DNA of 64,000 nt from Macrostomum lignano (Eukaryota). Each line of letters starts with the position of its first letter. Position 1 is the stretch's first letter. Below the pieces are notes generated by a model. The model was not told the DNA's origin, searched no databases, and worked only from the letters and a program-made list of their open reading frames with translations. Shown here one piece after another: positions 4,991 through 61,137 of the stretch. The stretch is from the NCBI GenBank assembly GCA_002269645.1, contig NIVC01003786.1, positions 12,820 to 76,819 on the forward strand, read 5' to 3'. Made by a program: the position numbers and the translations under genes.

Positions 4991-6191
4991 TCACTGCTCA
5001 GCGGCGGTAGCAGAGGAGGCGGTGGCGGTCTCGATCTCGATCTCAAGGGCAGGCGGGGAGCTCGGCGCTTCCGGCCGAGTTGACTTCGCCTCAGAAGCGG
5101 CTGCGGCGGCGCTCAGCGCCAGTTTCAGGCTGTCCCGCTCCTCTTCCAGGCTGCGCAGCTCTTCTTTCTGTGCCGTGTACTTCATCCGGAGCCGGCGCAC
5201 GTCGGGCGAGCCCTGCTCCTCCAGCTGGCGCCGCATCTTGGCGGACTCGGCCTCCAGCTGCACAACACGGGAGGCCTGGCCGCGAAGCCGGTTGAGCTGC
5301 CCAACTAGACAGTCGATGTGATTCCTGTAGCCGGTTTTCACTTTCTCAACCATGGCCAGGAATTGCGGCGTGGCCTTCTCTGGTAGGTGGCCCTCGCCCC
5401 AGTCGGTGAGAGACTCCCAGTCTGCGGCAATCGTCTCTGCGAAGGAAAGGAAAAGTACATTTGAAATAGCTAGATTAGACAGCGGCAAGCAATATATAAT
5501 TGGGCCGGACTAGACAATGTACGCACGTGGTAGAAATCACGTGATGTGCGGAGCGGGGGCAGGAATTAGGATGGCTAGTGTACATTACAAAAGGCTGGAG
5601 TGGGGTTGGTGTCGGGTTAAGATAAGAGACGTACATTTAGGTGCGACGAAAAACTTTTATCGATCTTACTAATCGAATGAGCTTTTCTCTTCACTCACCT
5701 TCAATACTGGCGGCGTCCTCTTCCATCCGTTCAGCAGCTGCGGCAACCGCGGCGCTGACTGCGGCTGTGGCGGCTGCAGCCCCGGCCGGTGTGCAGACTT
5801 GCGAGGAGCTCCTGTTGACAGCGGCAGCGGGAGCTAGGCGCACATTCGGAGTGTAGTCTCGATGAGTCTGGCGCTGCTGCTGCTCAGTGTTGGCAACCGG
5901 AGAAGCCAGCTTCTTTGGGTAGTTGGAGCTGCTGCTGAGCAGTACAGCGCCGGCACCATTGTCGGCTCCCGGCCTCAGATGTGGAGGCGCCAGTTTGGCG
6001 CCGCTAAAATAAAATTAAATGATAAATATATATCGTTTTTTCTTTTTAAATACGGATGCTTCAGACAAGGCAGGACATAAGCAATTGCGTGGGTGTGCAG
6101 TTTGATGCTGCAGTAAATTGCAATTATTTTATTAACTAACCCAGTCGCGACGTCTGGCGGCAGTGGGACGACAAATTTCGAGACAGTAGTG

Positions 6192-6230
<39 letters not shown>

Positions 6231-7549
6231 AAGTCTGCCACAGGTTTAGCCTCAAGTTTGTAGCGCTTGGCAGGGTCTGGACAGCCGGAAATGACAGTAC
6301 CGGATGTTGACTGCTGCTGCTGAAAATTGAAAAATTGAATTGATGCCACTTCATGATTACGAGCGTAAACTTTGCTGTTGTGAGCTTGCTAAGGCAGTTG
6401 TTGCGAAAGTAATATTGCATAATATGCTTCAACGTAGCTAGTAGCTATGCTCACCTGGGGCCGCTTGCGATCAAATTTAGCCTTGACGCCGTCGAGCACT
6501 TTCTCCAGGCAGGCGCGCTCGCTGTCCGCCAAGCAACCGTCGGCGGCGGAGTCGGTCAGCCGCTTGTCCAACTGCAGGTAGAGCCGCCACTTGGTCGAGT
6601 CGAAGCCCCAGTGGCAGGTCTCCCGCTCCTGCCGGGTGTGCGCATGGCCAACGAACTGGGCAGGCGAGAGCAACGCCTGGCAGCCATTGGGCCCGTTGCA
6701 CAAGATGCACGGAGCGTCCGGACTGGTGTACAGGCGTGGTATGAGGAAGCCGCGCTGCTTCCCGAAGCAGGTGTGATAAACCCCGATGCCGTCCTCGTCC
6801 GTGGGGCTGCCGCGGAATTTCGGCAGCTCGCTGTTCAGCAAGGCTTTGCAAAGTCGTTCGGCGTTGGACTTGGTGATGAGGCCGCAGCTCTCCAGCACCG
6901 GGCCGAACACTTTTCGCTCCTTAAGAACGCTCATCTGCTGGCTGTTGCATCTGTCGCAGAAGATGTTGAGATCCTCGCACACTCGATTGATGTCAGTTAG
7001 GGTGGCGCCAGCGCATAGCAGCACTTTGTTGAGCACCTGCGGCAGGCACAGTCGCTTCTCGCCACCAACGTCGAATGCAAAAATTGACTTGCCTTCGAGC
7101 GTTGTCTCCACCAGTTCGCCTGTTAATTGGCTCGGCGGAGCTGGTGCAGCTGCCGGGCGATTGTGTTGACTAGGATGAACATGTCGATGGCTGCTCTCAG
7201 CTTCCGATGATTGCTGCCTGCCATTGCTGCTGCCTGGCAACGGGACCATAGACGAATGAGCGGCTGGCGGCTGACGAGAGTCGACACACGAAAACTGAGT
7301 TGTCGGCGAAGGTTGCGACGCACCTAATAGTCTGGCGTTGAGTATGCTTCCAGTTGGCGCCACAGTCTGCTGCGGCGGCAGACGGAGCTGAGGCATGGCG
7401 ATGCTGGGTAAGTAGTAGTTCGGAGTTGGCGGCATGCTGCCAGGTCTCATGGAGGCTGCCGCGGCGGCGTAACCCTGCATCGTCTGCAGCATGGACAGCG
7501 AGGCTGCCTGTGCGATTAGGTTGAAGCTGCCTGGGACCGATGAGTTCAT
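4991..7549 (-). CDS. SKI: Ski/Sno-family transcriptional co-repressor (Ski/SnoN-like), 4 exons, about 674 aa
   Basis: Exon 1 (7549-6455) encodes the Ski_Sno/DHD domain (ETTLEGKSIFAFDVGGEKRLCLPQVL...CGLITKSNAERLCKALL) and the SMAD4-binding SAND-like domain (FGKQRG...CILC...F VGHAH..ERETCHWGFDSTKWRLYL). Hand-built phase-consistent GT-AG model: 7549-6455, 6319-6141 (polyQ), 6003-5699 (contains TPNVRLAP, like the PNVALAP motif of Ski), 5436-4991 (coiled coil, TGA). Total 2025 nt. An in-frame TAA upstream of 7549 supports the ATG. Confidence 0.93.
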
Positions 7550-9872: not shown

Positions 9873-11114
9873 GCTGAGCGAAGTAAAGCGTTTCATTAGC
9901 TCGAAATTTTACAACTTTTATTCGCGAGCTCACGCATAACTCGCAATAACACGATGATGTACCCGCAAAAATTCGATCATTTGAAGTTACGAGCTTCTGA
10001 ATGCAACTCACTCGAGGCAAATACATGTAGCGACACAAAGTAATGAAAGGCAATAAAAAGAACTTCAACTTTCAATGGCTATGTCTGATATATCTCTCCC
10101 CCTGTTTGTAACCTTCATCGTGTCGTGTCTCCTCTCCTTTTCTCTCACCCTCTTCTTTTGCACCTTCACCCAGCTGGCATACCATACATGAACATGTACA
10201 TGTACGCCCAAATGTCAATACTGAAGCCTTGAAAGAATGCATATAAGGTAAGATACACGCTTTGCAGATAGAGTGAGGGAGATAGGCTTACTGACAGATG
10301 GACGCCGCTGACTTCCGAATATCCTCATTCCCGTTGTTCCCTTCAACTTTTCTGCCTATATTGTTCGAACAACACGTGCAAGGAGACATGCAGCGGGTTT
10401 GAAATTGGAATCCTGGATCCTAAGTGTGGCTTATTCTCTGAAAAAATAGCAAAAAGTGAAGCAGCTGCATATAGAAGCAGGAAAGTCCATCATGTCCTGC
10501 TCTCTTCTTTCCCCTAGAAGCAATTATTTCTTGTTTTCTTGGGTTAGATTTGGTGAAGTTTCAAAAAGTTGGTTAAAAAACGCTAACTGCACTGCTATTG
10601 AAAATGGTTTGCAGCAGTTCTGCTGCAAGTACTAGAAAAATCCCTATATGCACTTCAGTCTGTCAATGATGCATTGTTTTCGCTATTAACCTCGCTTTGA
10701 TCGAGTACAACGGCATAGTGCTTCTTGGCCAGAAACTTCATGACACTCATGAAGTTTCGAGCTTGTGAAGTTTCAAGCCTCGCTTTCTCTGATATGATCA
10801 ATATTTAAATTAGGTCGAAATCTGAGAAAAATAGCTAAATCACCTGACCTTTCCGTTAAATAGCCTTAAATTAAGTCTGCACGTGTTGGTTGGTATATGT
10901 TAACCTTGTAAACACGGTGTACACGTAAGCCTGCCTTCTTCTGGGCACATCAATAACGGTCACAACCACAAGAAAGGCTAAAGTGTGACATACATGAAAG
11001 CCCCAACCCGTGATCACAAAGATCACGTGGCAATTCACCTGCTCAGTTTAAAAAAAGGTCCTCCCGCTTTGTCCCCCCACCCCAGCTTGTGTCACGTTGT
11101 GGTAATCAATAATT

Positions 11115-11330
11115 TTTCTTCAGGGCGCTAAAATATAGCGCCTCCGGCGCCAAAATGAGTGCTTGCGGCGCCAAAATGAGTGCTTGCGGCGCCAAAATGA
11201 GTACCTGCGGCGCCAAAATGAGCGCTGACAACAAGCAAATAGAAATGTAGGAATTTAGTCATGTACATGTATACTTTGTTGAATTCTTGGTTTTGTCCCC
11301 CTCTACCATGAAATCCATGGCGCGACGCCC
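11115..11330 (+). repeat. Dispersed element with internal 21-bp GCGCCAAAATGAGTGCCTGCG array (copy 1)
   Basis: Same flanks (TTCAGGGCG.. / CATGTACATGTA..GAATTCTTG..CCATGGCG) as the inverted copy at 27488-27915. A partial copy sits at about 14395-14480. Confidence 0.8.
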
Positions 11331-12769: not shown

Positions 12770-15700
12770 ATGGCTGAGGATCTAGAAGCCAGCAGACGAG
12801 GCGGCGTCGGCAAGGATGCATGCCCCGGGTTCGAGCCCCAGCCAGTCAGGCGGAGCTTGTGCCGCAGCTGCCATCGGACGAAATCGCAGCACGGCGCGAC
12901 CGGCACTACTTCGGCAGCTGCTGCGGCAGTCGCGGCAAGTGGCGGGTCGACATCGTCGCCGAGATCGTCGCGAACGTCGTCGTCTAGCGGAATGTCGCGT
13001 CGCGCTGCTGCGGCGTCTGCGGCGACGCCAGAATCGAAACGAAAGGAAAGAGAAGAGGAAGGAGGCGCCAGGGGCTTCGGCAGGGATTGTGAGCGATGCG
13101 AACTGGATTATAGCCTCTTTGACCCCCACATTCAACTGATCTTCTTGACCCCGATTCTAGAGGGTCTGCTGACCTTGACTCATTTTTATGAAATTACCTG
13201 ACAGCACGATACGGTTATAAACGCGTTAGTCAAGTGAATCCAAACCCTACCCTTGCCCTAACCCTAGCTCTCTACAAACGAATGTTATATACACATGTAG
13301 CTGACTTTGCCAACCCCCCTCCCCCCCCCCCCAACGAACTATCGCAGCTATCAGTCGGTCTCGTTCAGCCAGCAAGGAGAGCCTTCGCTCCTGCGGCTCC
13401 GGCCGCTCAGCTGGTGGAGGTCGAAGCGCTGCCGGTAACCTTGACGACAAATACGTCGAGGAGCTGGAGAGCGACTTGTTCGAGCTGGAGGACAAGTACG
13501 CGGTGCTGTGCAGAGACAAACAGCTTCTGGACGCTCAATTGGAGGAGAGGCTGGGCGATATTGAGGATCTGGAGAGGGAGTTGGATAGTTGTAAGACCAG
13601 GTGAGTCTAGACTCAAAGACATCGGTTTTAAAGTAACAACTGTTGAAGCCTGTGATGTAGCTTGTGATGTCTCACGCACAATCCTGTCGATTTCAGGGGC
13701 TCAACACTTGAGAAGCGAATTCCCCAGCTCGAGCAGGAGGTCCGCTGCTACAGAGAGCGTCTTCGACTTCCCGAATCCGAGCAGCGACCGGCGGCTGCCG
13801 ACTTCGATGACTTCGAAGGTCGAGCTCGCGAGCTCGAGGATCTGTGCCGCGAGCTGACCGAAGAGAATGACCAACTCAAAGAGGAAGTTGAAGAGCTTCA
13901 ACGCGAGCTCGAGGAGATGCACGACTCGTTCCAGGACAAGGAGGAGGGCCGGACGGGCACAGTTCGGGAGCTGCAGCGAGAGCTGGACGCGGCCAACAAG
14001 AGCTACCGGGTGGTGCAGTTCAAGCTGCGCAAGGCCGAACGACGCTTTGAGCAGTGCGAGGCTGAGCGAGCGGAGTTGGAGGAGAAATTCCGCCGCCTCG
14101 GCGAGAGAATTCTGTCAGGCGACGACAGCCTGCAGGTGAGCTTGACGGGATTGAGTTGCCTGCTAAAGAGGGTTGAGGGTGGGGTAGTGGTTCTTGAGAC
14201 CCTAAACCGAGGGATTAGACTTTCAAGTGGGGCAGTATTTTCCTGCAGTTTTCCATAGGCGTAGGAACGGGGGGGCCAAGTGGGACCATGCCCCCCCACT
14301 TTTTAAAATGGGGGGCCAGTAATGGTATCTGGTCCCTCCACATTTTAAATGTTGCTTATTTTTGGTTTTTGCTGCTTTGCATGAATGCATTTTGCTGCAG
14401 GGCGACAAAACATACCGCCTGCAGCGCCAAAATGAGTGCCTGCAGCGCCAAAATGAGTGCCTGCGGCGCTTTATAAGATGAGTGCTGACAAGACGGATTC
14501 TGAAAATAATCGGTACATGATAATGTGCATTTTCCATATAAAAAATCTGACTCGACGGGGGCGTGCGCCCTGTGCGCCCCCACCCCCCCCCCCTAAATCC
14601 GTCACTGAACCTGGCCCCCACTTTTTGAAACGTTCCTACGCCTATGCAGTTTTCTCGGGGTCAAATATTCTATTTCAGCAGGGTGAGTTCTGATAACAGT
14701 TTGAATAGGGAATTTGCTGTCTCAGCCGCTCAAAAACGAATTATAAGATGGGGAAAGTCTCAAGAGTGGAAACCGCCCGGAAAAATGAGAATCCAAATGG
14801 AAATTACCTCCATTCTCGTCCCCAGTCCAGAAAACTTTGATAGGGATCATTTCAAAGAAAGTTGATTGATCTTTTCCGATGGCTGTCTGCTTGGGTTATG
14901 CGCTCCCAAGTGAACGGAGTGAAGTGCGGTATGTGGTGTCCCCCCTCGAGGCTGAGAGCTTTTCCCCCTGATTTGGTCCTCTTATCAATCGGATCTGTAC
15001 TCGCGTGCAATTGTACTTTAGCTTTCTGATAGGGTTCCCTTTCACAAGCTCGAAACTTCACAACGTCGAATTGCTTGATGTCCGGCCCCGGGGGGTCCTT
15101 TGAGACTTCACAATAGCAAACTTAAGGTTTCTGTCTCTTCTCAGTTCTCTTCTTCTCTCGAATCTACTCTCTCTTTGTATCTTCTCTCTGATCTCATCTC
15201 TGATCTCTTCTTTCCTCTTCTCTCTCCCTCTCTCCTCGATTTGCTCTCCTTTCCTCTCTCATCTCGCCCGCATTCATGAGCTGGAGTCTTGATTATCAGA
15301 TGCTTGAGGCAAATTGAGGCTTCGCAGTAAGAGACCGCCGTAGCCTAGTCGCAATAGCTGCGGCTGAGCTGTCGGTTGCACATCTGGCCATAGGGGCAGG
15401 TGTAATAAGTTATTATTATTAATATTCCTATTAGTATTGTTATTGTTATTATTAACATTGTTAATATTAATATTATTATTATTATTAGTATTATTATTAC
15501 AAACACGCTTTTCGACGATGGGAAACTTAAATTGCATGAAACGACCCCTTCTGATGTACCAGTTCGGTCACGTGGGACCTCTTTGCCTTTTAAATTCATG
15601 AGATCTCAAAGAGTCGAGAGGTTGCCCCTGTTTTGTATAAAAAGTGTTTATTAACATTCGTATGAACTCAACTTCTCGACCTTCCCAGATCCAAGAGCTG

Positions 15701-24700: not shown

Positions 24701-27700
24701 TGGTAGGTGGTAGCTGGTAGCTGGTAGCTGGTAGTTGGTAGCTGGTAGCTGGTAGCTGGCAACCGGTAGCTGGTAGGTGGTAGCTGGTAGCTGGTAGCTG
24801 GTAGCTGGTAGGTGGTAGCTGGTAGCTGGTAGATGGTAGCTGGTAGCTGGTAGCTGGTAGATGTTAGCTGGTAGCTGGTAGGTGGTAGATGGTAGCTGGT
24901 AGCTGGTAGCTGGTAGCTGGTAGCTGGTAGCTGGTAGACGTTAGCTGGTAGCTGGTGGGTGGTAGATGGTAGCTTGTAGCTGGTAGCTGGTGGGTGGTAG
25001 ATGGTAGCTGGTAGCTGGTAGCTGGTAGCTGGTAGCTGGTAGCTGGTAGCTGGTAGCTGGTAGCTGGTAGCTGGTAGCTGGTAGCTGGTAGCTGGTAGAT
25101 GTTAGCTGGTAGCTGGTGGGTAGTAGATGGTAGCTGGTAGCTGGTGGGTGGTAGCTGGTAGCTGGTAGCTGGTAGCTGGTAGCTGGTAGACGTTAGCTGG
25201 TAGCTGGTGGTGGTAGATGGTAGCTGGTAGCTGGTAGCTGGTGGGTGGTAGATGGTAGCTGGTAGCTGGTAGCTGGTAGCTGGTAGCTGGTAGCTGGTAG
25301 ACGTTAGCTGGTAGCTGGTGGGTGGTAGATGGTAGCTGGTAGCTGGTAGCTGTAGCTGGTAGCTGGTAGCTGGTAGCTGGTAGCTGGTAGACGTTAGCTG
25401 GTAGCTGGTGGGTGGTAGATGGTAGCTGGTAGCTGGTAGCTGGTGGGTGGTAGCTGGTAGCTGGTAGATGGTAGCTGGTAGCTGGTAGCTGGTAGCTGGT
25501 AGCTGGTAGATGGTAGCTGGTAGATGTTAGCTGGTAGCTGGTAGGTGGTAGATGGTAACTGGTAGCTGGTAGGTGGTAGATGGTAGCTGGTAGCTGGTAG
25601 CTGGTAGGTGGTAGCTGGTAGCTGGTAGCTGGCAACCGGTAGCTGGTAGCTGGTAGCTGGTAGCTGGTAAGCTGATAGGTGTTAGCTGGCAACCGGTAGC
25701 TGGTAGGTGGTAGGTGGTAGCTGGTAAGCTGGTAGGTGTTAGCTGGCAACCGGTAGCTGGTAGCTGGTAGCTGGTAGCTGGTAGCTAGTATAGGTGGTAG
25801 CTGCAGCTGGTAGCTAGAACTGGTAGATGGTAGCTGGTATATGTTAGCTGGTAGCTGGTAGGTGGTAGCTGGTAGCTAGTAGGTGGTAGGTGGTAGCTGG
25901 TAGCTGGTAGCTGGTAGCTGGTAGATGGTAGCTGGTAGATGTTAGTTGGTAGCTGGTAGGTGGTAGATGGTAGCTGGTAGCTGGTAGCTGGTAGCTGGTA
26001 GCTGGTAGATGGTAGCTTGAAGCTGACACAACTTCCTGCCTTCATCATCAAGCTGAGATGCAAATCCGCTGCAGCAGTCATCCAGCGCCAGCCAATCAGA
26101 GTTGGAGCCGTTCTCAGCACCTGTCAGCCGATTCTGGCGCCAGCGGGACCAACAGCTGCGACAGCTGGAGGCTCAGCTGGCTGATCAGCGCAGAAGCACT
26201 CCGAGCTGGTGAGCCGACTCAGCAAAGAGAATCGACAGCTGCTGTCTCGGGTGCCGTCGTCAGGCTCGGGTGCCGCGGATGTTCCAGCGGTTCACCGGCG
26301 CAGCGAAATCCGGCGCCTCCGCGGCCGTGGGGCGCCGGCGCCTCGACTGCGGCCCGTTCGACGCGGAGCGGGCCGAACTGCAGGTGCGGCTGGCCGAGCA
26401 GGAGCGGCGGGTTGAACGCCAGCGAAAGGAGGCGGCCGAACTGGCCGGAAAGATGGCCGAAATGCGGCTGGAGCAGCTGGAGCGATGGGGCGGAGAGGCT
26501 GGGAGACTGTGGCGAAGGATCGAGGAAATGCGGCTCACATGCGACCAGGTGAAAGGAAGGATATTGCGGCGTGCTTTGATGTTTGGCTAATGGCGGCGTG
26601 CTTTGATGTTTGGTTAATGGCGGCGTGCTTTGATGTTTGTTTAATGGCGGCGTGCTTTGATGTTTGTTTAATGGCGGCCTGCTTTGATGTTTGTTTAATG
26701 GCGGCCTGCTTTGATGTTTGTTTAATGGCGGCCTGCTTTGATGCTTGTTAATGGCGGCGTGCTTTGATGTTTGGTTAATGGCGGCGTGCTTTGATGTTTG
26801 TTTAATGGCGGTGTGCTTTGATGTTTGTTTAATGGCGGCCTGCTTTGATGTTTGTTTAATGGCGGCCTGCTTTGATGTTTGTTTAATGGCGGCGTGCTTT
26901 GATGTTTGTTTAATGGCGGTCTGCTTTGATGTTTGTTTAATGGCGGCGTGCTTTGATGTTTGTTTAATGGCGGCGTGCTTTGATGCTTGTTAATGGCGGC
27001 TTGCTTTGATGCTGCATAAACACAGAGCTTTGTTCAATGGCGATATATTTCGATAATGTTCTCAGAGATCTTATCGCTGAATGCTCCGAACTTCACGCCA
27101 CAGGCGGGCAGATTGCAACGCGAATCGACGGAGTGGCGAGTCCGGGCGGAGAGCCTGCAGGAGACCCTGGCAAAGGAGAGTCAGCGCTGGGTTGGCGAGC
27201 GGGTGTCGCTGCAGTTCGCCAGTCAGCAGCTGCGCCTGGTGGTGGACCAGTGGCTGGACCGGTTCCAGGGCGCGGTTGAGGAGGTTCCTTGATGCTCAAT
27301 TATTTACCTTCATATCTTTAACCTATAAATCATCTTCCAAGTTTGATAGTCAAACGCTCTCCCCTTTCACAGATCAGTTCTATCAAGTTGGAATCTGAGG
27401 AGAACCGGCCCGCCAGACAAGACGAGGTAATGAAATTTTAGTCCAGTCCTTTTTTATTTTTGATACCGTGGGTAATTGATAAAATCAGTGGCATCGCCAT
27501 GGATTTTATGGTAAGTTGGGGGAGCAAAGTCAAGAATTCTACATATACATGTACATTATTTTAGAATAAGTGTTTTCAGTGCTAGTTTTGGCGCCTCAGG
27601 CACTTATTTTGGCACCTCGGGCAGTCATTTTAGCGCCGCAGGCACTCATTTTGGCACCTCGGGCAGTCATTTTAGCGCCGCAGGCACTCATTTTGGCGCC

Positions 27701-28751
27701 GCAGGCACTCATTTTGGCGCCGTAGGCACTCATTTTGGCGCCGCAGGCACTCATTTTGGCACCGCATGCAGTCATTTCGGCGCCGCAAGCACTCATTTTA
27801 GCGCCGCAGGCACTCATTTTAGCACCGCAGGCACTCATTTTGGCGCCGCAGGCAGTCATTTTGGCGCTGCAGGCACTCATTTTAGCGCCGCAGGCGATAT
27901 ATTTTGTCGCCCTGAAGCAAAGTTATTGATTTACATAACGAGTCACAAGATTGGGTGGGGAAAGCACTGGCATGTCCCCCCATTCTTATAGCTTTTACAG
28001 GTGGCGATCGACGCCCCTGAGTAAAATGAATTCTATTTAATTGACATTTCAGCTGAGGGCCACGCTGCAGGTCATTGTGGACGAGATTGGCAAGTACAAG
28101 GCGCGAGGCTCGAGCAGTCTGGACAGGAGCAGCGGTGCATCGAGAAAGAGCCACTCGGCCGGGTGAGTCAAAGGCGCGAATTTTGTTCAAGCGAAGTTCC
28201 TTAATTCCCTACTCCCCTGCGACTGACAAAACTCCTCCTGACTTCTCCTCAGCCGCCCGGTGGCCTCTCGTCGAACCGCGACAGCCGAGCTGCCGGCAGC
28301 CTCGGCGGCTCGCGGTCTCAGCGTCGCCACCAGCGTGCCAAAGTTTGTGCACTATCGGTACAACCTGCAGCAGCAGCAGAAGCAACAACAGCAGCAACAG
28401 CAGCAGAAGCAGCAGTTCCAGGAAAATCGCAGATCTGCGAGTCCCGACCTGCCAGAGACGAGAGAGGGGCCGACCCCACCGACGCCACAGCCAGCGGAAC
28501 CCGCAGCCGCTCCTGCACCGTCTGCGAAGCGACGCTTCTACCAGGGCTTCGACGAGCGGCTGTTCAGCGGCGACGGCGGCTCCAAGTCGTCGGAACAGAA
28601 GAAGCCTTTGGAGCAGACGAAGCCAAAGCCACAGGTGCAGCTGAAACCTGTCGCAGCGCCGTCCGGCGGCAGCCGGTTCGGTGTGACCCTGAGGGCCATC
28701 AAAACGGACCGGCCGCCAACTGTCGTGTCCAGGACTGCTGGCAGCAGCTGA
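12770..28751 (+). CDS. SOGA: SOGA/MTCL-family (microtubule cross-linking factor-like) long coiled-coil protein, about 17 exons
   Basis: SOGA-like motifs: ENDQLKEEVEELQRELEEMHDSF...ELQRELDAANKSYRVVQFKLRKAERR, ELEDELRTAKEVSVRLHDELE and LVEQLRFSKEEVKIMRRKL. Phase-consistent exons: 12770-13088, 13348-13600, 13697-14135, 15689-15877, 16246-16702, 16982-17362, 17701-17923, 18232-18340, 18947-19090, 19509-19878, 21651-22249, 22700-22969, about 26075-26548 (frame problem, see findings), 27104-27283, 27373-27426, 28053-28162, 28253-28751 (TGA). Family-level call only; orthology not tested. Confidence 0.8.
14254..14646. mobile_element. hAT-type MITE (393 bp)
   Basis: Perfect 16-bp TIRs CATAGGCGTAGGAACG / CGTTCCTACGCCTATG and perfect 8-bp TSD CAGTTTTC (14246-14253 and 14647-14654). 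Lies in intron 3 of the SOGA-like gene. Confidence 0.9.
15280..15500 (+). mobile_element. 3' tail of a non-LTR retroelement (LINE/SINE-like): stem-loop plus (ATT)n tail
   Basis: GC-rich foldable segment (about 15297-15386) followed by a degenerate (ATT)n tract (about 15410-15500). No RT ORF upstream. Confidence 0.5.
18461..18790. repeat. Local duplication of a 100-140-bp element (CCCAAGAATTTAAGTGGCGATTGAGTCACGTGACCAGACC...GCGCCTGGTGCCCAATCCTAG)
   Basis: Two near-identical copies (about 18461 and 18602) and a degenerate third (about 18717). Confidence 0.8.
19215..19505. repeat. C/A-rich minisatellite (CCCCAAAACACTCCAA-type); G4T4-like on the minus strand
   Basis: Direct reading; ends at the acceptor of exon 10 (19508). 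Confidence 0.9.
19975..20180. repeat. CCCTCTCTA-based low-complexity tandem repeat
   Basis: Direct reading. Confidence 0.85.
20715..21620. repeat. C-rich minisatellite (CCCCACCTCTCT variants)
   Basis: Direct reading; intronic, between SOGA-like exons 10 and 11. Confidence 0.92.
22322..22498. repeat. 21-bp perfect minisatellite (GGGATCTGGGAAACACAAGGG), about 8 copies
   Basis: Direct reading. Confidence 0.95.
23078..26018. repeat. About 2.9-kb 7-bp satellite (GGTAGCT)n with variant units
   Basis: Direct reading; source of the spurious PATSYQL ORFs. Confidence 0.97.
26567..27012. repeat. 27-bp minisatellite (GCGGCGTGCTTTGATGTTTGTTTAATG), about 16 copies
   Basis: Direct reading; the MAACFDVCL 9-aa period in the ORF track. 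Confidence 0.95.
27488..27915 (-). repeat. Dispersed element with expanded 21-bp array (copy 2, about 14 units)
   Basis: Reverse-complement homolog of 11115-11330 with more repeat units. Confidence 0.8.
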
Positions 28752-43352: not shown

Positions 43353-43889
43353 ATACACATGCATGTACAACTCGGTTACAGGTTGGGTAAAAATTGTTCT
43401 GTAACAGAGACACTTGGAATTTGGGTTGTAGAGACATTTTCAGTTCGGAACAGACGACATTTTTGTACATATCCAAGGACCACTTGCAGCATAAATACAA
43501 GTGTAGCATAACTAAATTTACGTGTACATACAGCTCAATAAATTTTACTTCTCATATAAGGAGGCAAGCACAAGACAAAGCGGATGAATGTACATGCACA
43601 TTTAGTACTCGCATTTCGGAGCACCAAAAGGTGCATACGAGTGTAAAATTTTTAATCAAAATAGAAAACCAAAAATAGCTTGTACCTTGAAGCAATCGCA
43701 CGAGAAAAGCAGCCCAACAACGCAGCAAAGTACTTTTACATAGATTTGTGATTTTCATTGAAAAATATGCACGTCACTTTTCTGGCAGGCATTAAATTGA
43801 GACACTACATGACAAAATGATAATTTGTATGATAACGGCCTAGTCAGTACCTTGATCGGATATACTGAAGTTGCTCCCCGACGCCCTGT

Positions 43890-45413
43890 GAAGAAGGAGA
43901 AGGAGTAGGAGAAGGAGTAGGAGAAGGAGTAGGAGTAGGAGAAGAAGAAGGAGAAGAAGGAGAAGGAGAAGGAGTAGGAGTAGGAGAAGAAGAAGGAGAA
44001 GGAGTAGGAGAAGGAGTAGGAGTAGGAGAAGAAGAAGGAGAAGAAGGAGTAGGAGAAGGAGTAGGAGTAGAAGTAAGAGTAGGAGAAGAAGAAGGAGAAG
44101 AAGGAGTAGGAGAAGGAGTAGGAGTAGGAGAAGAAGAAGGAGAAGAAGGAGTAGGAGAAGGAGTAGGAGTAGGAGAAGAAGGAGAAGAAGGAGTAGGAGA
44201 AGGAGTAGGAGTAGGAGTAGGAGAAGAAGAAGGAGAAGAAGGAGTAGGAGAAGAAGAAGGAGTAGGAGTAGGAGTAGAAGTAGGAGAAGGAGAAGGAGTA
44301 GAAGTAGGAGTAGGAGTAGAAGTAGTAGAAGGAGTAGGAGTAGAAGTAGGAGAAGGAGTAGGAGTAGGAGTAGGAGTAGAAGTAGGAGAAGGAGAAGGAG
44401 TAGAAGTAGGAGAAGGAGTAGGAGTAGGAGTAGGAGTAGAAGTAGGAGAAGGAGAAGGAGTAGAAGTAGGAGAAGGAGTAGGAGTAGAAGTAGGATAAGG
44501 AGTAGGAGTAGGAGTAGAAGTAGGAGAAGGAGAAGGAGTAGAAGTAGGAGTAGGAGTAGAAGTAGTAGAAGGAGTAGGAGTAGAAGTAGGAGAAGGAGTA
44601 GGAGTAGGAGTAGGAGTAGAAGTAGGAGAAGGAGAAGGAGTAGAAGTAGGAGAAGGAGTAGGAGTAGGAGTAGGAGTAGAAGTAGGAGAAGGAGAAGGAG
44701 TAGAAGTAGGAGAAGGAGTAGGAGTAGAAGTAGGATAAGGAGTAGGAGTAGGAGTAGGAGTAGAAGTAGGAGAAGGAGAAGGAGTAGAAGTAGGAGAAGG
44801 AGTAGGAGTAGGAGTAGGAGTAGAAGTAGGAGAAGGAGAAGGAGTAGAAGTAGGAGAAGGAGTAGGAGTAGAAGTAGGATAAGGAGTAGGAGTAGGAGTA
44901 GGAGTAGAAGTAGGAGAAGGAGAAGGAGTAGAAGTAGGAGTAGGAGTAGAAGTAGTAGAAGGAGTAGGAGTAGAAGTAGGAGAAGGAGTAGGAGTAGGAG
45001 TAGGAGTAGAAGTAGGAGAAGGAGAAGGAGTAGAAGTAGGAGAAGGAGTAGGAGTAGGAGTAGGAGTAGAAGTAGGAGAAGGAGAAGGAGTAGAAGTAGG
45101 AGAAGGAGTAGGAGTAGAAGTAGGATAAGGAGTAGGAGTAGGAGTAGGAGTAGAAGTAGGAGAAGGAGAAGGAGAAGGAGTAGGAGTAGGAGTAGAAGTA
45201 GGAGAAGAAGAAGGAGAAGGAGTAGAAGTAGGAGAAGGAGAAGGAGAAGGAGAAGGAGTAGGAGTAGGAGTAGAAGTAGGAGAAGGAGTAGGAGTAGGAG
45301 TAGGAGTAGGAGAAGGAGTAGGAGTAGGAGTAGGAGTAGGAGTAGGAGTAGAAGTAGGAGTAGAAGTAGGAGAAGGAGTAGGAATAGGAGTAGAAGTAGG
45401 AGAAGGAGTAGGA
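43890..45413. repeat. 1.5-kb compound trinucleotide array: (AGG/AGT/AGA)n on plus, (C/A/T)CT on minus
   Basis: Direct reading; stop-free in two minus-strand frames (poly-Leu and Pro/Thr/Ser). Confidence 0.95.
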
Positions 45414-45703
45414 TCTGGATCAGTAGGATTTGCATAAATTCGTGACACAGACAGGGACAGGGAAACAGTACAGGGACACAAGGATGCCGCCTGATTCCGA
45501 GAAAAAGCAGACCAAGTAATTCTGAGGTTTCACGAGTACATTTTGCATTTTTTGCTGTCTGTCTCGACGCTGGCTACGCAAGACAAGTTGCTGGGTTAAG
45601 AGTTTTGCTGCATGGCCAAGATCTACTGTTTATTCAGACGGGAGTGGATGCTTCACCGTTAAATAAACGTCCTCTTACAGTGGTCCCTGCATACCCGCAG
45701 GCA

Positions 45704-46612: not shown

Positions 46613-49600
46613 TCTATCTATCTATCTTAATACTAAAAGTGGTGCGTTGTTTGTCTGTATGTATGTCAGTTCGATAACTCCTCCTAGAATACTTGCAACT
46701 CAGCGTTGAAACTTATCTTAATACTAAAAGTGGTGCGTTGTTTGTCTGTATGTATGTCAGTTCGATAACTCCTCCTAGAATACTTGCAACTCAGCGTTGA
46801 AACTTATATGGGAAAACTGCAAATTTTCCGAGGATGGCTTTAGGCTATTTTAATCTTTCATTTTTAAATTTTAAGATCCCTAAAAAAGCAGGAAGCAGCA
46901 ATTCTGACCTTTGATAATCTTATTTGTCCCCTCTTTCTGCTCGGAGCTGAAAATTGGCATAAATTTTGAGTGATTACGCCACAACTTTTTCCTATGTCGC
47001 CAGTGCATTTTCTCTCCTGTGGGGGAATGGGCGCGTTCTCATTGGCGGCGTGTGTACAATCGGACCCTGGCTCACTGGCTGACTTTATTTTAACAGGAAG
47101 CCCTGTGTATTTTTTGCACAGTGAAATTCAGTGCATTTTAATGCATAAACTTGCGAGCATCTTTAGCAGGCAGTGAACGTACACTCGATATTTCAATGCT
47201 TAAAATCAGAAAGTTTCAAACACTAACTGTTGCTCGAGTTTTGAACTTAGAGAGGAGAGACTTATATTGCTGGAAAGATCTTGCAGCGATGAGTTCGGGG
47301 ATATAAGTTTTTTGCTTTAAATATGAAAATTAAATTCACAGCATTCAAGAAAAGATTTTCATACTTTTAGCTTTCTGCAAAGATTTTGCTCATTTTGGAG
47401 TTCAATGGGGGTTCGACCGACCCCCCCCCCAATAGTTGGTAGGGGGTTCAATTTCTAGCTGCACTGCGTATTGGAAGGGGGTCGGTTGCTGTGTATTGGA
47501 GGGCTGATTTAGATTGCGCAATCTTTTTGTTAACTTTAACCGACGCTGATACTGACTGCCTGAGAAATAAGTTGCGCAATTTAATTGGTTCAATGTTTTT
47601 ACGGAGCCTTTCAACACGCAGCTGTGTGTAGCTCTAACCCTAACCCTAACCAATGAATTCTGAGAGCTGGGCTGTTTGACGTAGAAATTTCGATTTAGTC
47701 CAGTTTCACGGAGAGGATTTCTATTTCGCGGAGAATATTTCGATGGTGTTCAGTTTCACGGAGAGGATTTCGATAGTGTTCAGTTTCACGGAGACGATTT
47801 CTGTTGCGCGGAGAGGTGTTGGAAAATGGGATTCCGCTGATGGAGTTCAGGGAATGGAATTCCGCTGATTGGAGTTCTTCCCCTTTCTTCTCCGAAGGAG
47901 GAGTTGGCCTCGTCTCTATCTATATATACTAAAGTTGACGCGTTGTTTGTCTGTCTGTCTGTGTGTCTGTCTGTCATTTCGACAACTCCTCCTTGAATAG
48001 TGGCAACTCAGCGTTGAAACTTATATGGGAAGATTGGAAATTATCCGAGGTCGGCTATAGGCTATTTTAATTCTGAAATTTTAATTTCTAAGATCCTCAA
48101 AAAAGCAGAAAACGGCGGTCTTGACCTTTGATAATCTTAATTGTCCCCTCTTTCTGCTTGGAGCTGAAAATTTGCATGAATTTCAAGTGATTGCGCCACA
48201 ACTTTTCCCTATCTCTGCAGTGTATTTTCTCTCCAGTGGGGGGATGGGGCGTTCTAAATGGCTGCCTGTGTACAATCGGACCCTGGCTCACTGGCTGACT
48301 GTATAGACAATTGCGCAAAGATTTGTGTTCTAATTTTCAATAGGCAGCCCTGTGATTTTGTTGAACCTTGAAATTCAATGCATAAACTTGCGGGCCTCTT
48401 TAGCAGGCAGTGAACGTACAATCGATATTTCAATGCTTTAAATCAGAAAGTTTCAAACGCAAACTGTTGCTCGAGTTTTTAACTTTGAGAGAAAAAATTT
48501 ATATTGCTGGAAAGAACTTGCAAAGCTGATTTCAGGGATATAAATTGTTTGCTTCAAATATGAAAACTAAAAGCTCTGCATTGCAAAAACTATTTCCATA
48601 CTTTAAACTTTCTGCAAAGATTGTACTCATTTTGGCGAGAGGTGAGAGATAAAGTTGGGGGTTTCGACTTCTAACTGGCGCTGTGTATAGGAAGAGGGTC
48701 AGTTGCTTTGTATTGGAGGGTTGATTAGATTGCGCAAACTTTTTGTTAACTTTAACTGAGACTGATACTGACTGACTGTGAAATCGGTTGCGCAATGAAT
48801 TGATTCAATTAGTTCAATATTTTTATCAGTGCCTTTTAACACAAAGCTGTGCGTAGTTCTAACCCTAACCCTAACCCTAACCCTAACCCTAACCAATGAA
48901 TCCGGAGAGTTGAGTTGTTTGACGGAAAAAATTCGATTGAGTCCAGTTTAGCGGAGACGATTTCAATGTTTTAATTTTGACGGAGAGGATTTCTGTTTCG
49001 TGGAGAGGATTTCGATGGTGTTCAGTTTCGTGGAAAGGATTTCGATGATGTTCAGTTTCGTGAAAAGGATTTCGATGGTGCTCAGTTTCACGGAGAGGAT
49101 TTCGATGATGTTCAGCTTCACGGAGAGGATTTCTGTTTCGCAGAGATAATTTATGATTGATTTCTGTTTTATGGAGACCATTTTGATGGATTTAAGTTTC
49201 AAGGAGAGGATTTCGAAGGAGTCCAGTTTCACGGAGAGGATTTCGATGGTTTTCAGTTGCACAGACTGCTTCGCGGAGAGGATCTTGATGGATTTGGCAT
49301 CTTCAATCAGTCAGAGAAGAGAGTAAAGAGAAGAATGAAAGGAGAAGAGAGATGAGATGATAGAAAACAGAGTAGAAATGAGTGAAGAGATTAAACATGA
49401 CAGATGGGAGAGAAGAAGGGAGTAAGGCGGGAACGAAGGAGAGAGAAGAGAAGAGGAGAGAGGAGATGAAGGGAGAGGATATGAGAGAGGAGATATGAGA
49501 TAGCAGAGAGGAGACAGGAGAGAGAAGAAAAGAGGGATAAGAGCGTACAGAGGCAATAGAAGAGAGGAAAGAGAGGATAGAGGTGAGAGGTGAGAGGAGT

Positions 49601-52600: not shown

Positions 52601-53911
52601 CTAACCCTAACCCTAATGAATCTGGCGAGTTGAGTTGTTTGACGGAAAAAATTCGATTAAGTCAAGTTTAGCGGAGACGATTTCAATGTTTAAATTCTGA
52701 CGGAGAAGATTTCTGTTTCGTGGAGAGGATTTCGATGATGTTCAGTTTCACGAAAGGATTTCCATGGTGTTCAGTTTCACGGAGAGGATTTCGATCATGT
52801 TCAGCTTCACGGAGAGGCTTTCTGTTTCGCTGAGATAATTTATGATTGATTTCTGTTTTATGGAAACAATTTTGATGGATTCAGGTTTCAAGGAGAGGAT
52901 TTCGAAGGAGTCCAGTTTCACTGAGAGGATTTCGATGGTTTTTAGTTGAACAGACAGGATTTTTGCTTCGCGGAGAGGATTTTGATGGATTTGGCATCTT
53001 CAATCAGTCAGAGAAGAGAGTAAAGAGAAGACTGAAAAGAGAAGAGAGAAGAGATGATAGAAAACAGAGTAAATTGAGTGGAGAGATTAGACATGACAGA
53101 TTGGAGATGATAGGAGAGAGAATAGATGAGGGATAAGAGCGTACAGAGGCAATAGAAGAGAGGGGAGAGTAGAGGAGAAAGAAAGAGTGAGATGAGGAGA
53201 TGAGGAGATGAGGGATGAGAGAGGAGGGGAGAGAGGAGACAGGAGAGAGTACAGACGAAAGACTAGGGAGAAGATATAAATAAGGTAGTAAAGATGAGAG
53301 GAGAGAGAGGAGAGAGAAGCGAAAGGAGAAGAGAGTGAGGAGAGAGGAGAGAGATGAAAGGAGCAAGGAAAGGAGAAAAGAGAGAATGGAGAGAATAGAA
53401 AAGAGAGAAGAGAAGAGACAGGGGATAGTGAAAAGGAGGAAGAAAGATGGGAGACAAGAAAGTAGTGTCAGAGCGTATATGAAATATGAGAAATGAGAGC
53501 AGAGAGAAGAGAAAAGAGAAGAGAGAGAGAGGGTTAAGAGAGACGATAGATAAGTGAGTAGAGATGACATATGAGAGAGGAGAGAAGAGGGAGAGATAAG
53601 AGTGAAGAGAGGAGACAGAAGACAGGAGAAGGTACAGACGAAAGACGAGGGAGAAGAGATAAATAAGGGAGCAGGGGTAGAGATGAGATGAGAGAGAGGA
53701 GAGAGGAGATATGAGAGACTTGAGAGTCTTTGAGCTATGGTCTTTGAAAGATTTTGTAAAGAATTTGGAGACGATTTGGAAGATAGGGTTAAAGACATGG
53801 AATTTCAGTTGATGGATATTTCAGGGAATAGAATTCCGGTGATGGGAGTTCTTCCCCTTTCTCCTCCGAAGGAGGAGTTCCACTTCTCTATATATACTAA
53901 AGTTGACGTGT

Positions 53912-53943
<32 letters not shown>

Positions 53944-61105: not shown

Positions 61106-61137
<32 letters not shown>

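What the first reader, a model, noticed from the sequence alone, without database searches (positions are those of the whole stretch)
15297..15400. 27-nt antisense copy of the Macrostomum spliced leader inside a structured retroelement-like 3' tail
Seen: plus strand 15311-15337 reads AAATTGAGGCTTCGCAGTAAGAGACCG, so the minus strand reads CGGTCTCTTACTGCGAAGCCTCAATTT. Recalled, not database-verified: the M. lignano SL is CGGTCTCTTACTGCGAAGACTCAATTTATTGCATG, which would be a 26/27 match to the SL 5' part. The match stops before the terminal TTGCATG and there is no GT donor or clear Sm site, so this is not an SL RNA gene. On the plus strand the region folds: CAGATG (about 15297) pairs with CATCTG (about 15380), and a long hairpin forms at about 15334-15374 with three G-U pairs that work only on this strand. 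Most of the anti-SL stretch is left unpaired, and an (ATT)n tail follows. Inference: either (a) a LINE/SINE whose RNA can base-pair with SL RNA or with the 5' ends of trans-spliced mRNAs, as a targeting or priming device or a guide RNA, or (b) a relic of an SL-gene-targeting element in the manner of NeSL/SLACS.
Basis: partly seen in the sequence, partly recalled or inferred. Interest (0 to 1): 0.8.

Follow-up and report, generated by a model that had tools for sequence, protein, structure and literature searches.

The report
Spliced-leader fragment fused to retroposon tail
The backwards 27-base copy of the flatworm spliced leader is real, but it sits at the broken front end of an ordinary SINE/LINE-type retroposon tail inside a gene's intron, and the related retroposon copies I could find lack it, so it is most likely a one-off accident of retroposition and not a device for pairing with spliced-leader RNA.

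Summary
Observation confirmed. Window 15311-15337 (minus strand) matches nt 1-27 of the published 35-nt Macrostomum SL at 26/27, once in 64 kb, with chance expectation 0.

15334-15403 shares ACCGCCGTA plus a 33/33 block with the tail of a SINE in M. lignano (L007). It shares a second hairpin with a related SINE in a metagenomic Macrostomum-like contig (L003). An imperfect (TTA)n tail follows at 15410-15499.

None of the three relatives (L007, L003, and M. lignano protein P0128, an exonised tail) has the anti-SL. Homology to them begins at ACCG, which overlaps SL nt 1-4. So the SL piece lies at the 5'-truncation junction with a 4-nt microhomology. There is no splice donor, no Sm site and no similarity to an SL RNA gene beyond the 27 nt.

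The locus lies in intron 14136-15688 of an MTCL1-like gene. The missing 8 nt of the SL (ATTGCATG) lie 194 nt downstream on the other strand, which hints at a 220-bp inversion.

Best reading: a one-off chimeric retroposition or repair junction. I could not search the source genome, so a family-wide anti-SL module is not excluded (about 0.1). Interest is low to moderate.

The parts
15311..15337 (-). Copy of spliced-leader nt 1-27 (26/27; C instead of A at SL position 19). It is antisense to the host gene and to the retroposon tail.
15334..15337 (+). ACCG, 4 nt shared by the end of the anti-SL (complement of SL nt 1-4) and the start of homology to the retroposon family. This is the junction microhomology.
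   Evidence: L007 1276-1284 ACCGCCGTA = window 15334-15342
15334..15386 (+). Retroposon 3' region with hairpin 1 (stem 15337-15376). 15352-15384 is 33/33 identical to the M. lignano SINE tail at L007:1307-1339.
15380..15403 (+). Hairpin 2 (ACATCTG..CAGGTGT). L003:329-357 has the counterpart (ACATC..GGTGT). The L007 copy lacks it.
15410..15499 (+). Imperfect (TTA)n/(ATT)n simple-repeat tail of the retroposon.
   Evidence: L007 copy ends ...CACATCA(ATT)n
15304..15310 (+). TTGAGGC, a direct duplicate of anti-SL bases 15314-15320, separated from them by AAA. A junction scar of unknown origin.
   Evidence: read directly
15500..15530 (+). 31-nt spacer (CAAACACGCTTTTCGACGATGGGAAACTTAA) between the repeat tail and the ATTGCATG octamer. 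It begins with CAAAC, like the flank of the L007 copy.
15531..15538 (+). ATTGCATG = SL nt 28-35, on the strand opposite to nt 1-27. Candidate other half of a split SL.
   Evidence: 2 occurrences in 64 kb, both strands
14136..15688 (+). Host intron (GT..AG) of an MTCL1/SOGA-like coiled-coil gene. The whole feature lies inside it, 351 nt upstream of the 3' splice site.
   Evidence: the exon join ...GDDSLQ|IQELEDEL... is colinear with S. japonicum MTCL1, 54% over 136 aa

Best explanation
The segment is the 5'-truncated 3' end of a non-LTR retroposon on the plus strand: two hairpins followed by an (ATT)n tail, as in SINE/LINE families whose tail the reverse transcriptase recognises. The retroposon belongs to a family shared with M. 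lignano. The anti-SL is not part of that element. It is a passenger fused to the truncated 5' end.

Proposed mechanism. During target-primed reverse transcription the retroposon cDNA stopped at ...ACCG. Its 3' end (CGGT) annealed through this 4-nt microhomology to the end of an SL-bearing nucleic acid and was joined to it. That partner was either a cDNA of SL RNA or of a trans-spliced mRNA, in a twin-priming-type resolution, or an SL copy already present in the target DNA. This places the SL in inverted orientation next to the tail.

The SL piece was probably complete at first. A conservative inversion of 15311-15530 would explain why SL nt 28-35 now lie 194 nt away on the other strand, and why TTGAGGC flanks the left breakpoint.

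Shown: the retroposon tail, the junction position, the microhomology, the absence of the anti-SL in relatives, and the absence of SL-gene features. Inferred: the joining mechanism, the inversion, and that the fragment has no function of its own.
For: Tail homology.
- 33/33 identity of window 15352-15384 to L007:1307-1339 (M. lignano GCA_002269645.1), E = 8e-10.
- ACCGCCGTA is shared ~20-30 nt further upstream.
- L007:1075-1355 reads as a SINE: A/B-box-like head, a core shared with L003, an (ATT)n tail, and direct repeats ATTATTA[T/G]CAAACC on both sides.
- Hairpin 2 is shared with L003.
- Tail fold z = -2.96, top ~1-1.5% of windows.

Anti-SL absent from relatives.
- L007 and L003 continue into SINE body upstream of ACCG.
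- M. lignano protein P0128 carries the same body in antisense translation.
- The window has no SINE body, so its copy is 5'-truncated.

No SL gene.
- Similarity to the real SL RNA gene stops at 27 nt. The flanks score no better than shuffles.
- Rfam gives nothing.

Split-SL hint.
- ATTGCATG occurs only twice in 128 kb of both strands. One copy is at 15531-15538, on the strand and side expected for an inversion. By my estimate p is about 0.003-0.013.
Against: - Only three relatives were available: two DNA copies and one seen only as protein. All are SINE-type. The partner LINE was never seen, so a subfamily carrying the anti-SL cannot be excluded.
- No convincing target-site duplication bounds the chimera. 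Only CAAA is shared, at 15310-15313 and 15500-15503.
- RNA-seq assemblies in two congeners, and the L003 gene, extend the SL 10 nt upstream of CGGTCTC. The SL boundary here may therefore reflect the microhomology and not an RNA 5' end.
- The 31-nt spacer and the TTGAGGC duplication are not cleanly explained.
- With gaps allowed, the ATTGCATG flank scores only in the top 2% of window segments.
- No covariation evidence supports the hairpins.
Confidence: 0.6

Rival explanations
1. DNA-level origin. A complete SL copy (34/35) already lay in the intron on the plus strand, directly followed by AAACGACC. It would be a relic of a retro-copied trans-spliced 5' end. The (ATT)n-tailed retroposon then integrated at or next to it, perhaps favoured by the SL's ATTTATT motif pairing with the (AUU)n tail. 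The SL was split at nt 27/28, either by a template switch onto the nicked target strand or by a later 220-bp inversion. In effect this is an SL-hitting insertion, but not by a dedicated SL-specific element.
For: - The complementary breakpoints are exact: nt 1-27 at 15311-15337 (-) and nt 28-35 at 15531-15538 (+).
- After the inversion is undone, the SL would end exactly at the exon boundary and be followed by non-donor sequence. That is what a spliced SL would look like, not an SL gene.
- The L007 copy's direct repeat begins with ATT repeats, consistent with tail-to-target annealing.
- M. lignano is reported to hold at least one genome-encoded SL at the 5' end of a protein-coding gene (PMC8629364).
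- The ACCG microhomology is also what a standard 5' junction to target DNA would show.
Against: - It needs a rare pre-existing SL copy.
- The 31 nt between the tail and ATTGCATG need an extra assumption, such as 3' transduction or filler.
- The octamer could be chance (p about 0.01; one search puts the flank in the top 2%).
- There is no AG acceptor and no retrocopy body to explain how the SL got there.
Confidence: 0.2
2. The anti-SL is a conserved module in the 3' UTR of a LINE or SINE subfamily. Its RNA pairs with SL RNA or with trans-spliced mRNA 5' ends for targeting, priming or regulation.
For: - The tail is a genuine retroposon tail on the same strand.
- An SL-to-anti-SL duplex would be very stable: -45 kcal/mol for the 35-nt SL against 15271-15420.
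- Both genomic loci that hold SL sequence (the window and L003) have a member of this tail family within 250 nt. Both were, however, selected for containing SL.
- The source genome was never searched.
Against: - Three relatives lack the anti-SL, and homology begins exactly at its edge.
- There is no second copy in the window.
- An exhaustive protein-level search with the translated region found only two unrelated repetitive proteins. One of them was checked at DNA level and shows no similarity.
- A six-frame word-index search found only the L007-type tail.
- The anti-SL is not preferentially single-stranded.
- The fragment stops at nt 27 and carries a junction duplication, which looks like a scar and not a module.
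Confidence: 0.1
3. Relic of a dedicated SL-gene-specific non-LTR element (NeSL-1/SLACS/CZAR type), or a decayed SL RNA gene or pseudogene.
For: A retroelement tail abuts an SL fragment. In L003 a family member lies 225 nt upstream of a real SL RNA gene.
Against: - There is no donor, Sm site, stem-loops or promoter similarity. The flanks score no better than shuffles against the L003 gene.
- The locus is inside an intron of a protein-coding gene.
- The SL parts are in opposite orientations.
- The L007 copy is not in an SL gene.
- No ORF of 70 aa or more between 8 and 22 kb reads as an RT or endonuclease; these ORFs were read by eye and not scanned against Pfam.
Confidence: 0.03
4. Exapted function in the host gene. 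The intronic anti-SL tethers SL RNA 351 nt upstream of the exon-2 acceptor and promotes internal trans-splicing. This would give an N-terminally truncated MTCL1-like isoform started from the SL's AUG.
For: - The anti-SL is on the sense strand of the host pre-mRNA.
- The SL ends in ATG and exon 2 starts in phase 0 (ATG|ATC CAA GAG), so the fusion would be in frame.
- The duplex is stable.
Against: - There is no expression data.
- It is a single locus.
- An in-frame join has a 1-in-3 chance.
- Pairing would sequester the SL's 5' half, which normally forms stem I with the donor.
Confidence: 0.03

Closest known systems
Stringent-type LINE/SINE 3' tails (conserved stem-loop plus simple-repeat tail recognised by the partner LINE's reverse transcriptase, e.g. 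eel UnaL2/UnaSINE1). From my own knowledge, not tested here.
   Same: - There are hairpins immediately upstream of a short-unit repeat tail.
- The tail sequence is shared between copies whose bodies differ: window, L007, L003.
- The window copy is 5'-truncated.
   Different: - The partner LINE is unknown.
- Covariation in the hairpins was not demonstrable with three sequences.
- Hairpin 2 is missing in the L007 copy.
L1 twin-priming 5' inversions (Ostertag and Kazazian 2001; my own knowledge)
   Same: An inverted segment abuts a sense-oriented, 5'-truncated retroelement 3' part, and the two are joined at a short microhomology (ACCG).
   Different: Here the inverted segment is not from the element itself but from the spliced leader. 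The target-site duplication is not established.
Chimeric retrocopies made by RT template switching (U6-L1 and other snRNA-LINE chimeras; tripartite chimeras in Magnaporthe, PMC2104539; L1 recombination with diverse RNAs, PMC13174262)
   Same: Sequence from an abundant small nuclear RNA is fused directly to a 5'-truncated retroelement copy.
   Different: In those chimeras the captured RNA is in the same orientation as the element and usually full-length from its 5' end. Here it is inverted and only 27 nt long.
SL-gene-specific non-LTR elements: SLACS, CZAR, CRE1/2 (trypanosomatids) and NeSL-1 (C. elegans). My own knowledge.
   Same: A non-LTR retroelement lies next to spliced-leader sequence.
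   Different: - Those elements insert at a fixed site inside tandem SL RNA genes, with both SL parts co-oriented.
- They encode a restriction-like endonuclease.
- Here there is no SL gene, the location is intronic, the SL parts are in opposite orientations, and another family copy lies outside any SL gene.
Genome-encoded SL relics from retroposed trans-spliced mRNAs (dinoflagellates, from my own knowledge; the M. lignano gene Mlig013257.g1 with a genomic SL, PMC8629364)
   Same: A spliced-type SL with no donor lies in the genome outside SL genes.
   Different: Those relics sit in sense orientation at the 5' end of a retrocopied gene. Here the fragment is partial, inverted and attached to a retroposon tail.

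Membership tests
SL RNA gene | Complete SL exon immediately followed by a GT (GTAAG) splice donor | tested here: not met
   The match stops at nt 27 and the next bases are GCCTCAAGC. The control gene L003 has ...GCATG|GTAAGAC.
SL RNA gene | Sm-binding site and stem-loops II/III downstream; stem I formed between the SL 5' part and the donor | tested here: not met
   The downstream 110 nt score below the shuffle mean against the L003 gene. The L003 gene itself folds into three stems with AUUUUUA between them. No Rfam hit.
SL RNA gene | Upstream promoter region similar to genuine SL genes | tested here: inconclusive
   No similarity to the L003 upstream region. L003 is from another, unidentified Macrostomum-like organism.
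Macrostomum (ATT)n-tailed SINE/LINE retroposon family (3' tail) | Sequence homology of the 3' region to other copies | tested here: met
   33/33 plus ACCGCCGTA to L007. Hairpin 2 and flanks shared with L003. P0128 carries an antisense translation of the same tail.
Macrostomum (ATT)n-tailed SINE/LINE retroposon family (3' tail) | Simple-repeat (ATT)n 3' terminus | tested here: met
   15410-15499, period 3, 30 copies, 72% matches. L007 ends CACATCA(ATT)n.
Macrostomum (ATT)n-tailed SINE/LINE retroposon family (3' tail) | Stable stem-loop(s) just upstream of the tail, on the sense strand only | tested here: met
   z = -2.96. Top 1-1.5% of windows. Minus strand z = -0.07. Covariation is not demonstrable.
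Macrostomum (ATT)n-tailed SINE/LINE retroposon family (3' tail) | Target-site duplication flanking the insertion | tested here: inconclusive
   Only CAAA is shared at the two junctions. The 8-mers found are at chance level. The L007 copy has a 13/14 direct repeat.
Macrostomum (ATT)n-tailed SINE/LINE retroposon family (3' tail) | SINE body (tRNA-like head, conserved core) or LINE ORF upstream | tested here: not met
   No body similarity anywhere in the window. No ORF of 70 aa or more between 8 and 22 kb reads as RT-like (read by eye, no Pfam scan). The copy is therefore 5'-truncated.
SL-gene-specific non-LTR elements (SLACS/CZAR/CRE/NeSL-1) | Insertion at a fixed site inside an SL RNA gene, with both SL parts co-oriented around the element | tested here: not met
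   There is no SL gene features. The locus is intronic. SL nt 1-27 and the candidate nt 28-35 are on opposite strands.
SL-gene-specific non-LTR elements (SLACS/CZAR/CRE/NeSL-1) | Other family copies also reside in SL genes | tested here: inconclusive
   The L007 copy is not near any SL. The L003 copy lies 225 nt upstream of an SL gene but not inside it. Only two DNA copies were available.
snRNA-LINE template-switch chimeras (U6-L1 type) | Captured RNA in the same orientation as the element, upstream of its truncated 5' end | tested here: not met
   The SL is antisense to the tail.
Twin-priming-type 5' inversion | Inverted 5' segment joined to a sense 3' segment at a microhomology | tested here: met
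   ACCG overlap at 15334-15337.
Twin-priming-type 5' inversion | Inverted segment derives from the same element RNA | tested here: not met
   The inverted segment is spliced-leader sequence.

The most novel reading that the evidence does not exclude
A subfamily of the (ATT)n-tailed Macrostomum retroposons carries a conserved 27-nt anti-SL in its 3' region. Its RNA would then base-pair with SL RNA or with the 5' ends of trans-spliced mRNAs, either to hijack or prime on them or to interfere with trans-splicing. The window copy would be one member of that subfamily. A related possibility is that this intronic copy has been exapted to tether SL RNA and drive in-frame internal trans-splicing of the MTCL1-like gene.
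Probability: 0.1. Interest if true: 0.8.

Novelty: new member of a known kind. Interest (0 to 1): 0.3.

Why it matters
If the best reading is right, this is a small curiosity. It is a natural example of spliced-leader sequence caught at the 5' junction of a non-LTR retroposon in a flatworm. That would add SL RNA or trans-spliced 5' ends to the list of abundant nuclear RNAs that leave chimeric scars through LINE machinery. It also flags an undescribed (ATT)n-tailed SINE family shared between Macrostomum lineages.

It would matter much more if the anti-SL proved to be conserved across many copies. That would be a transposon built to pair with the trans-splicing machinery, and it is easy to test by one BLAST against the source genome.

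For annotation, such fragments should not be scored as SL RNA genes.

Tried and rejected
- Chance match: rejected. No shuffle reproduces it.
- SL RNA gene or pseudogene: rejected. Flank alignments to a genuine gene (L003) score no better than shuffles, and Rfam and ARAGORN give nothing.
- Other copies in the window: none found by blastn with word sizes 7-9 or by mismatch searches.
- Orthologous or homeologous intron:
  - The MTCL1-like query found no Macrostomum protein.
  - The Ski-like neighbour gave only a 70%-identical Logan transcript and a 45%-identical M. lignano paralogue.
  - That paralogue's locus, L007, happened to contain the SINE that solved the tail.
- ENA loci L008 and L009: unrelated organisms.
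- Six-frame protein search with the region plus the SINE: only P0128.
- Exhaustive search with the translated anti-SL/tail frame: two repetitive proteins. The one fetched (P0130, locus L010) has no DNA similarity.
- Pattern scans of viral and prokaryotic genome collections: nothing. The single metagenome scan gave L001-L003.
- Target-site duplication search: only chance-level 8-mers. AAACTTAA at 15118 and 15523 is not adjacent to the tail.
- A longer degenerate SL on either flank: not significant. The plus flank is in the top 2% and the minus flank in the top 15%.
- RNAalifold on three tails: no covariation.
- Literature search for SL-retroposon chimeras or Macrostomum SINEs: nothing specific.
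Full report
1. THE OBSERVATION

The plus strand 15311-15337 reads AAATTGAGGCTTCGCAGTAAGAGACCG. Its complement matches nt 1-27 of the published 35-nt M. lignano spliced leader, CGGTCTCTTACTGCGAAGACTCAATTTATTGCATG, at 26/27 (SL taken from PMC8629364). [quoted passage not shown] There the RNA-seq-assembled leader extends 10 nt further 5' (GCCGTAAAGA).

The match is unique in the 64-kb window, and no dinucleotide shuffle gives one. The recalled SL was therefore correct and the match is not chance.

2. NOT AN SL RNA GENE

One metagenome scan for the SL core returned three contigs.
- Two look like trans-spliced cDNAs, with the SL followed by coding sequence.
- The third, L003, carries a genuine SL RNA gene. 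It has the SL, then GTAAGAC, a stem, AUUUUUA and a terminal stem. It folds into the canonical three stems.

Aligned to this gene, the window matches only the 27 nt. The downstream and upstream flanks score at or below the shuffle mean. Rfam and ARAGORN find nothing.

3. CONTEXT

The flanking ORFs on the plus strand are exons of a coiled-coil gene. Its best database relative is Schistosoma japonicum microtubule cross-linking factor 1. Joining ...GDDSLQ (ends at 14135) to IQELEDEL... (starts at 15689) gives an ungapped 54%-identical alignment over 136 aa. So 14136-15688 is a GT..AG intron, and the feature lies inside it, 351 nt from the acceptor.

The anti-SL is therefore on the sense strand of the host pre-mRNA.

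The species is unresolved. A Ski-like ORF at 6389-7549 is 70% identical to a Logan transcript and only 45% identical to an annotated M. lignano Ski-family protein.

4. THE KEY RESULT: THE PLUS STRAND IS A RETROPOSON TAIL, AND ITS RELATIVES LACK THE ANTI-SL

I fetched the M. lignano locus of the Ski paralogue (L007, GCA_002269645.1) and compared it with the window. This gave an unexpected 33/33 match, window 15352-15384 = L007:1307-1339.

L007:1075-1355 reads as a SINE. It has:
- an A/B-box-like head (GTAGCCTAGTG...GGTTCGATTCC), although ARAGORN does not call it a tRNA;
- a core, GCATTGCTTCAGTTCACCCAGCTGT;
- a 3' region ...ACCGCCGTACGCAGCC...CAATAGCTGCGGCTGAGCTGTCGGTTGCACATC;
- an (ATT)n tail;
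- flanking direct repeats ATTATTA[T/G]CAAACC.

L003 holds a diverged copy of the same SINE at about 125-400. That copy ends in ...TTGTACATC, then a hairpin (AGGCACAGCCAGCCTGCCAGGTGT), then AT-rich repeats.

The window shares three things with these copies:
- ACCGCCGTA plus the 33-nt block, with L007;
- the second hairpin (ACATCTGGCCATAGGGGCAGGTGT, 15380-15403), with L003;
- an imperfect (TTA)n tract at 15410-15499.

The 79-nt tail 15334-15412 folds into two hairpins at -35.2 kcal/mol, z = -2.96. The 75-nt stretch 15334-15408 gives the same energy and ranks in the best 1-1.5% of 75-nt windows. The minus strand does not fold better than shuffles. With only three sequences, no covariation can be shown.

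However, in L007 and L003 the sequence upstream of ACCG is SINE body, not anti-SL. An M. lignano protein model, P0128, contains the antisense translation of the same L007-type tail and body. The window has no SINE body anywhere.

Homology to the family thus begins at ACCG (15334-15337). Those same four bases are the complement of SL nt 1-4. The anti-SL sits exactly at the 5'-truncation point of the retroposon copy, with a 4-nt overlap.

- The long hairpin (15337-15376; 16 bp, four of them G-U) is confirmed.
- The proposed outer CAGATG/CATCTG stem is not in the MFE. CATCTG forms hairpin 2.
- In a 370-nt context the anti-SL is not preferentially unpaired. Its mean unpaired probability is 0.37, against 0.44 overall, and its first nine bases are fully paired.

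6. JUNCTION SCARS

- Immediately left of the anti-SL is TTGAGGC (15304-15310). It is a direct duplicate of anti-SL bases 15314-15320, separated from them by AAA.
- The eight SL bases missing from the fragment, ATTGCATG, occur only twice in the window on either strand. One copy is at 15531-15538 on the plus strand, 31 nt beyond the repeat tail.
- Inverting 15311-15530 would rebuild a contiguous 34/35 SL on the plus strand. It would end exactly at the exon boundary and be followed by AAACGACC, with no GT.
- In that ancestral arrangement TTGAGGC and GCCTCAA would be a 7-bp inverted repeat near the two breakpoints.
- I estimate the chance of the octamer at that strand and side within 200 nt at about 0.003, and about 0.013 for either strand within 250 nt either side. 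With gaps allowed, the flank scores only in the top 2% of window segments. This is a lead, not proof.
- No convincing target-site duplication was found. The two junctions share only CAAA. The flank after the tail starts with CAAAC, as does the distal part of the L007 copy's direct repeat.

7. MECHANISM

Shown:
- a 5'-truncated (ATT)n-tailed retroposon 3' end;
- an inverted SL nt 1-27 fused to it at a 4-nt microhomology;
- relatives without the anti-SL;
- no SL-gene features.

Inferred: during target-primed reverse transcription the retroposon cDNA (3' end ...CGGT) was joined by microhomology to an SL-bearing partner. There are two candidates for that partner.
- (i) The 3' end of a cDNA copied from SL RNA or from a trans-spliced mRNA. 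This would be a twin-priming-type resolution, and the A-run at 15311-15313 could have primed on SL U25-27.
- (ii) An SL copy already present in the target DNA.

A conservative 220-bp inversion, or a template switch onto the nicked target strand, would account for the split at nt 27/28.

I put about 0.6 on the general statement that this is a one-off junction passenger and not an element module. Within it, variants (i) and (ii) have comparable weight. Variant (ii) is also listed separately as the main rival.

The fact that the SL in congeners extends 10 nt further 5' argues that the microhomology, and not an RNA end, sets the nt-1 boundary.

8. RIVALS

The three relatives, the absence of further hits in two protein-space searches and the scar-like junction all argue against it (about 0.1).
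- A NeSL/SLACS-type SL-gene-specific element fails the defining tests (about 0.03).
- An exapted role in tethering SL RNA to the host intron is possible in principle. The SL's ATG would be in frame with exon 2, and the duplex energy is -45 kcal/mol. It is untested (about 0.03).

9. COMPARISON WITH KNOWN SYSTEMS, AND NOVELTY

The tail works like stringent-type LINE/SINE 3' ends. The junction resembles twin-priming inversions and snRNA-LINE chimeras (PMC2104539 and PMC13174262 for the general phenomenon). It differs from them in combining an inverted orientation with a foreign RNA source.

It is best filed as a new member of a known kind, a chimeric retroposition scar or SL relic. Interest is low to moderate.

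10. LIMITS

- No Macrostomum genome could be searched by DNA.
- Only 24 kb of M. lignano (L007) and one 3-kb metagenomic contig were available as comparators.
- Copy number, the empty site, the partner LINE and expression all remain untested.

Noticed in passing
L003:125-400 and L003:615-735: In the metagenomic Macrostomum-like contig, a copy of the same SINE family lies about 225 nt upstream of a genuine SL RNA gene, in the same orientation. Both genomic loci that hold SL sequence (the window and L003) therefore have this tail family within 250 nt. Both were selected for containing SL, so the association may be an ascertainment effect, or the SINE may be part of the SL-gene repeat unit.
   Followed up: partly
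window 15531-15538 (+): ATTGCATG, the last 8 nt of the SL, lies 194 nt from the 27-nt fragment on the opposite strand. Inverting 15311-15530 would rebuild a contiguous 34/35 SL followed by AAACGACC.
   Followed up: partly
window 15304-15320 (+): TTGAGGC-AAA-TTGAGGC: a 7-nt direct duplication at the left edge of the anti-SL. It carries the same C19 variant base as the SL fragment, which points to a local templated duplication at the junction.
   Followed up: no
window 15687-15697 (+): Exon 2 of the MTCL1-like gene starts in phase 0 (ATC CAA GAG). An SL trans-spliced at this acceptor would supply an in-frame ATG.
   Followed up: no
window 63892-63904 (-): GACTCAATTTATT, a 13-nt exact match to SL nt 18-30 (canonical A19 form) in an AT-rich stretch. 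By my estimate the chance of such a match is about 0.06, so it is probably chance.
   Followed up: partly
L007:1075-1355 and protein P0128: An apparently undescribed SINE family in M. lignano, with a tRNA-like head and an (ATT)n tail. One M. lignano UniRef gene model (a SAM-domain protein, P0128) contains an antisense SINE tail translated as ...MCNRQLSRSYCAAHLKAAYGCSVQGLG..., which is either an exonisation or a mis-annotation.
   Followed up: partly
window 14417-14469; 27586-27921; 11112-11231: A 21-bp minisatellite (GCCTGCAGCGCCAAAATGAGT) in the same intron has larger arrays elsewhere in the window, partly in inverted orientation.
   Followed up: no
window 4991-7549 (-) versus L007:9995-13602: A Ski/Sno-family gene (Pfam Ski_Sno and c-SKI_SMAD_bind in its homologues) lies head-to-head with the MTCL1-like gene. 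The M. lignano locus L007 has a 45%-identical Ski paralogue with coiled-coil ORFs upstream on the opposite strand, which suggests an old paralogous block. The window's own Ski protein is not among annotated M. lignano proteins, so the source species is uncertain.
   Followed up: partly
window 48000-64000: Multi-kb repeated blocks, for example 53004-53798, 58004-58570 and 60283-60993, and 55851-56594 with 62794-63792. They show strong positive GC skew and CT/GA-rich low complexity that cross-matches the CT-rich tract at 15130-15257.
   Followed up: no
window 43840-45481: About 1.6 kb of near-perfect simple repeat. It reads as poly-Leu in one frame and as a Pro/Thr/Ser-rich repeat in another.
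   Followed up: no
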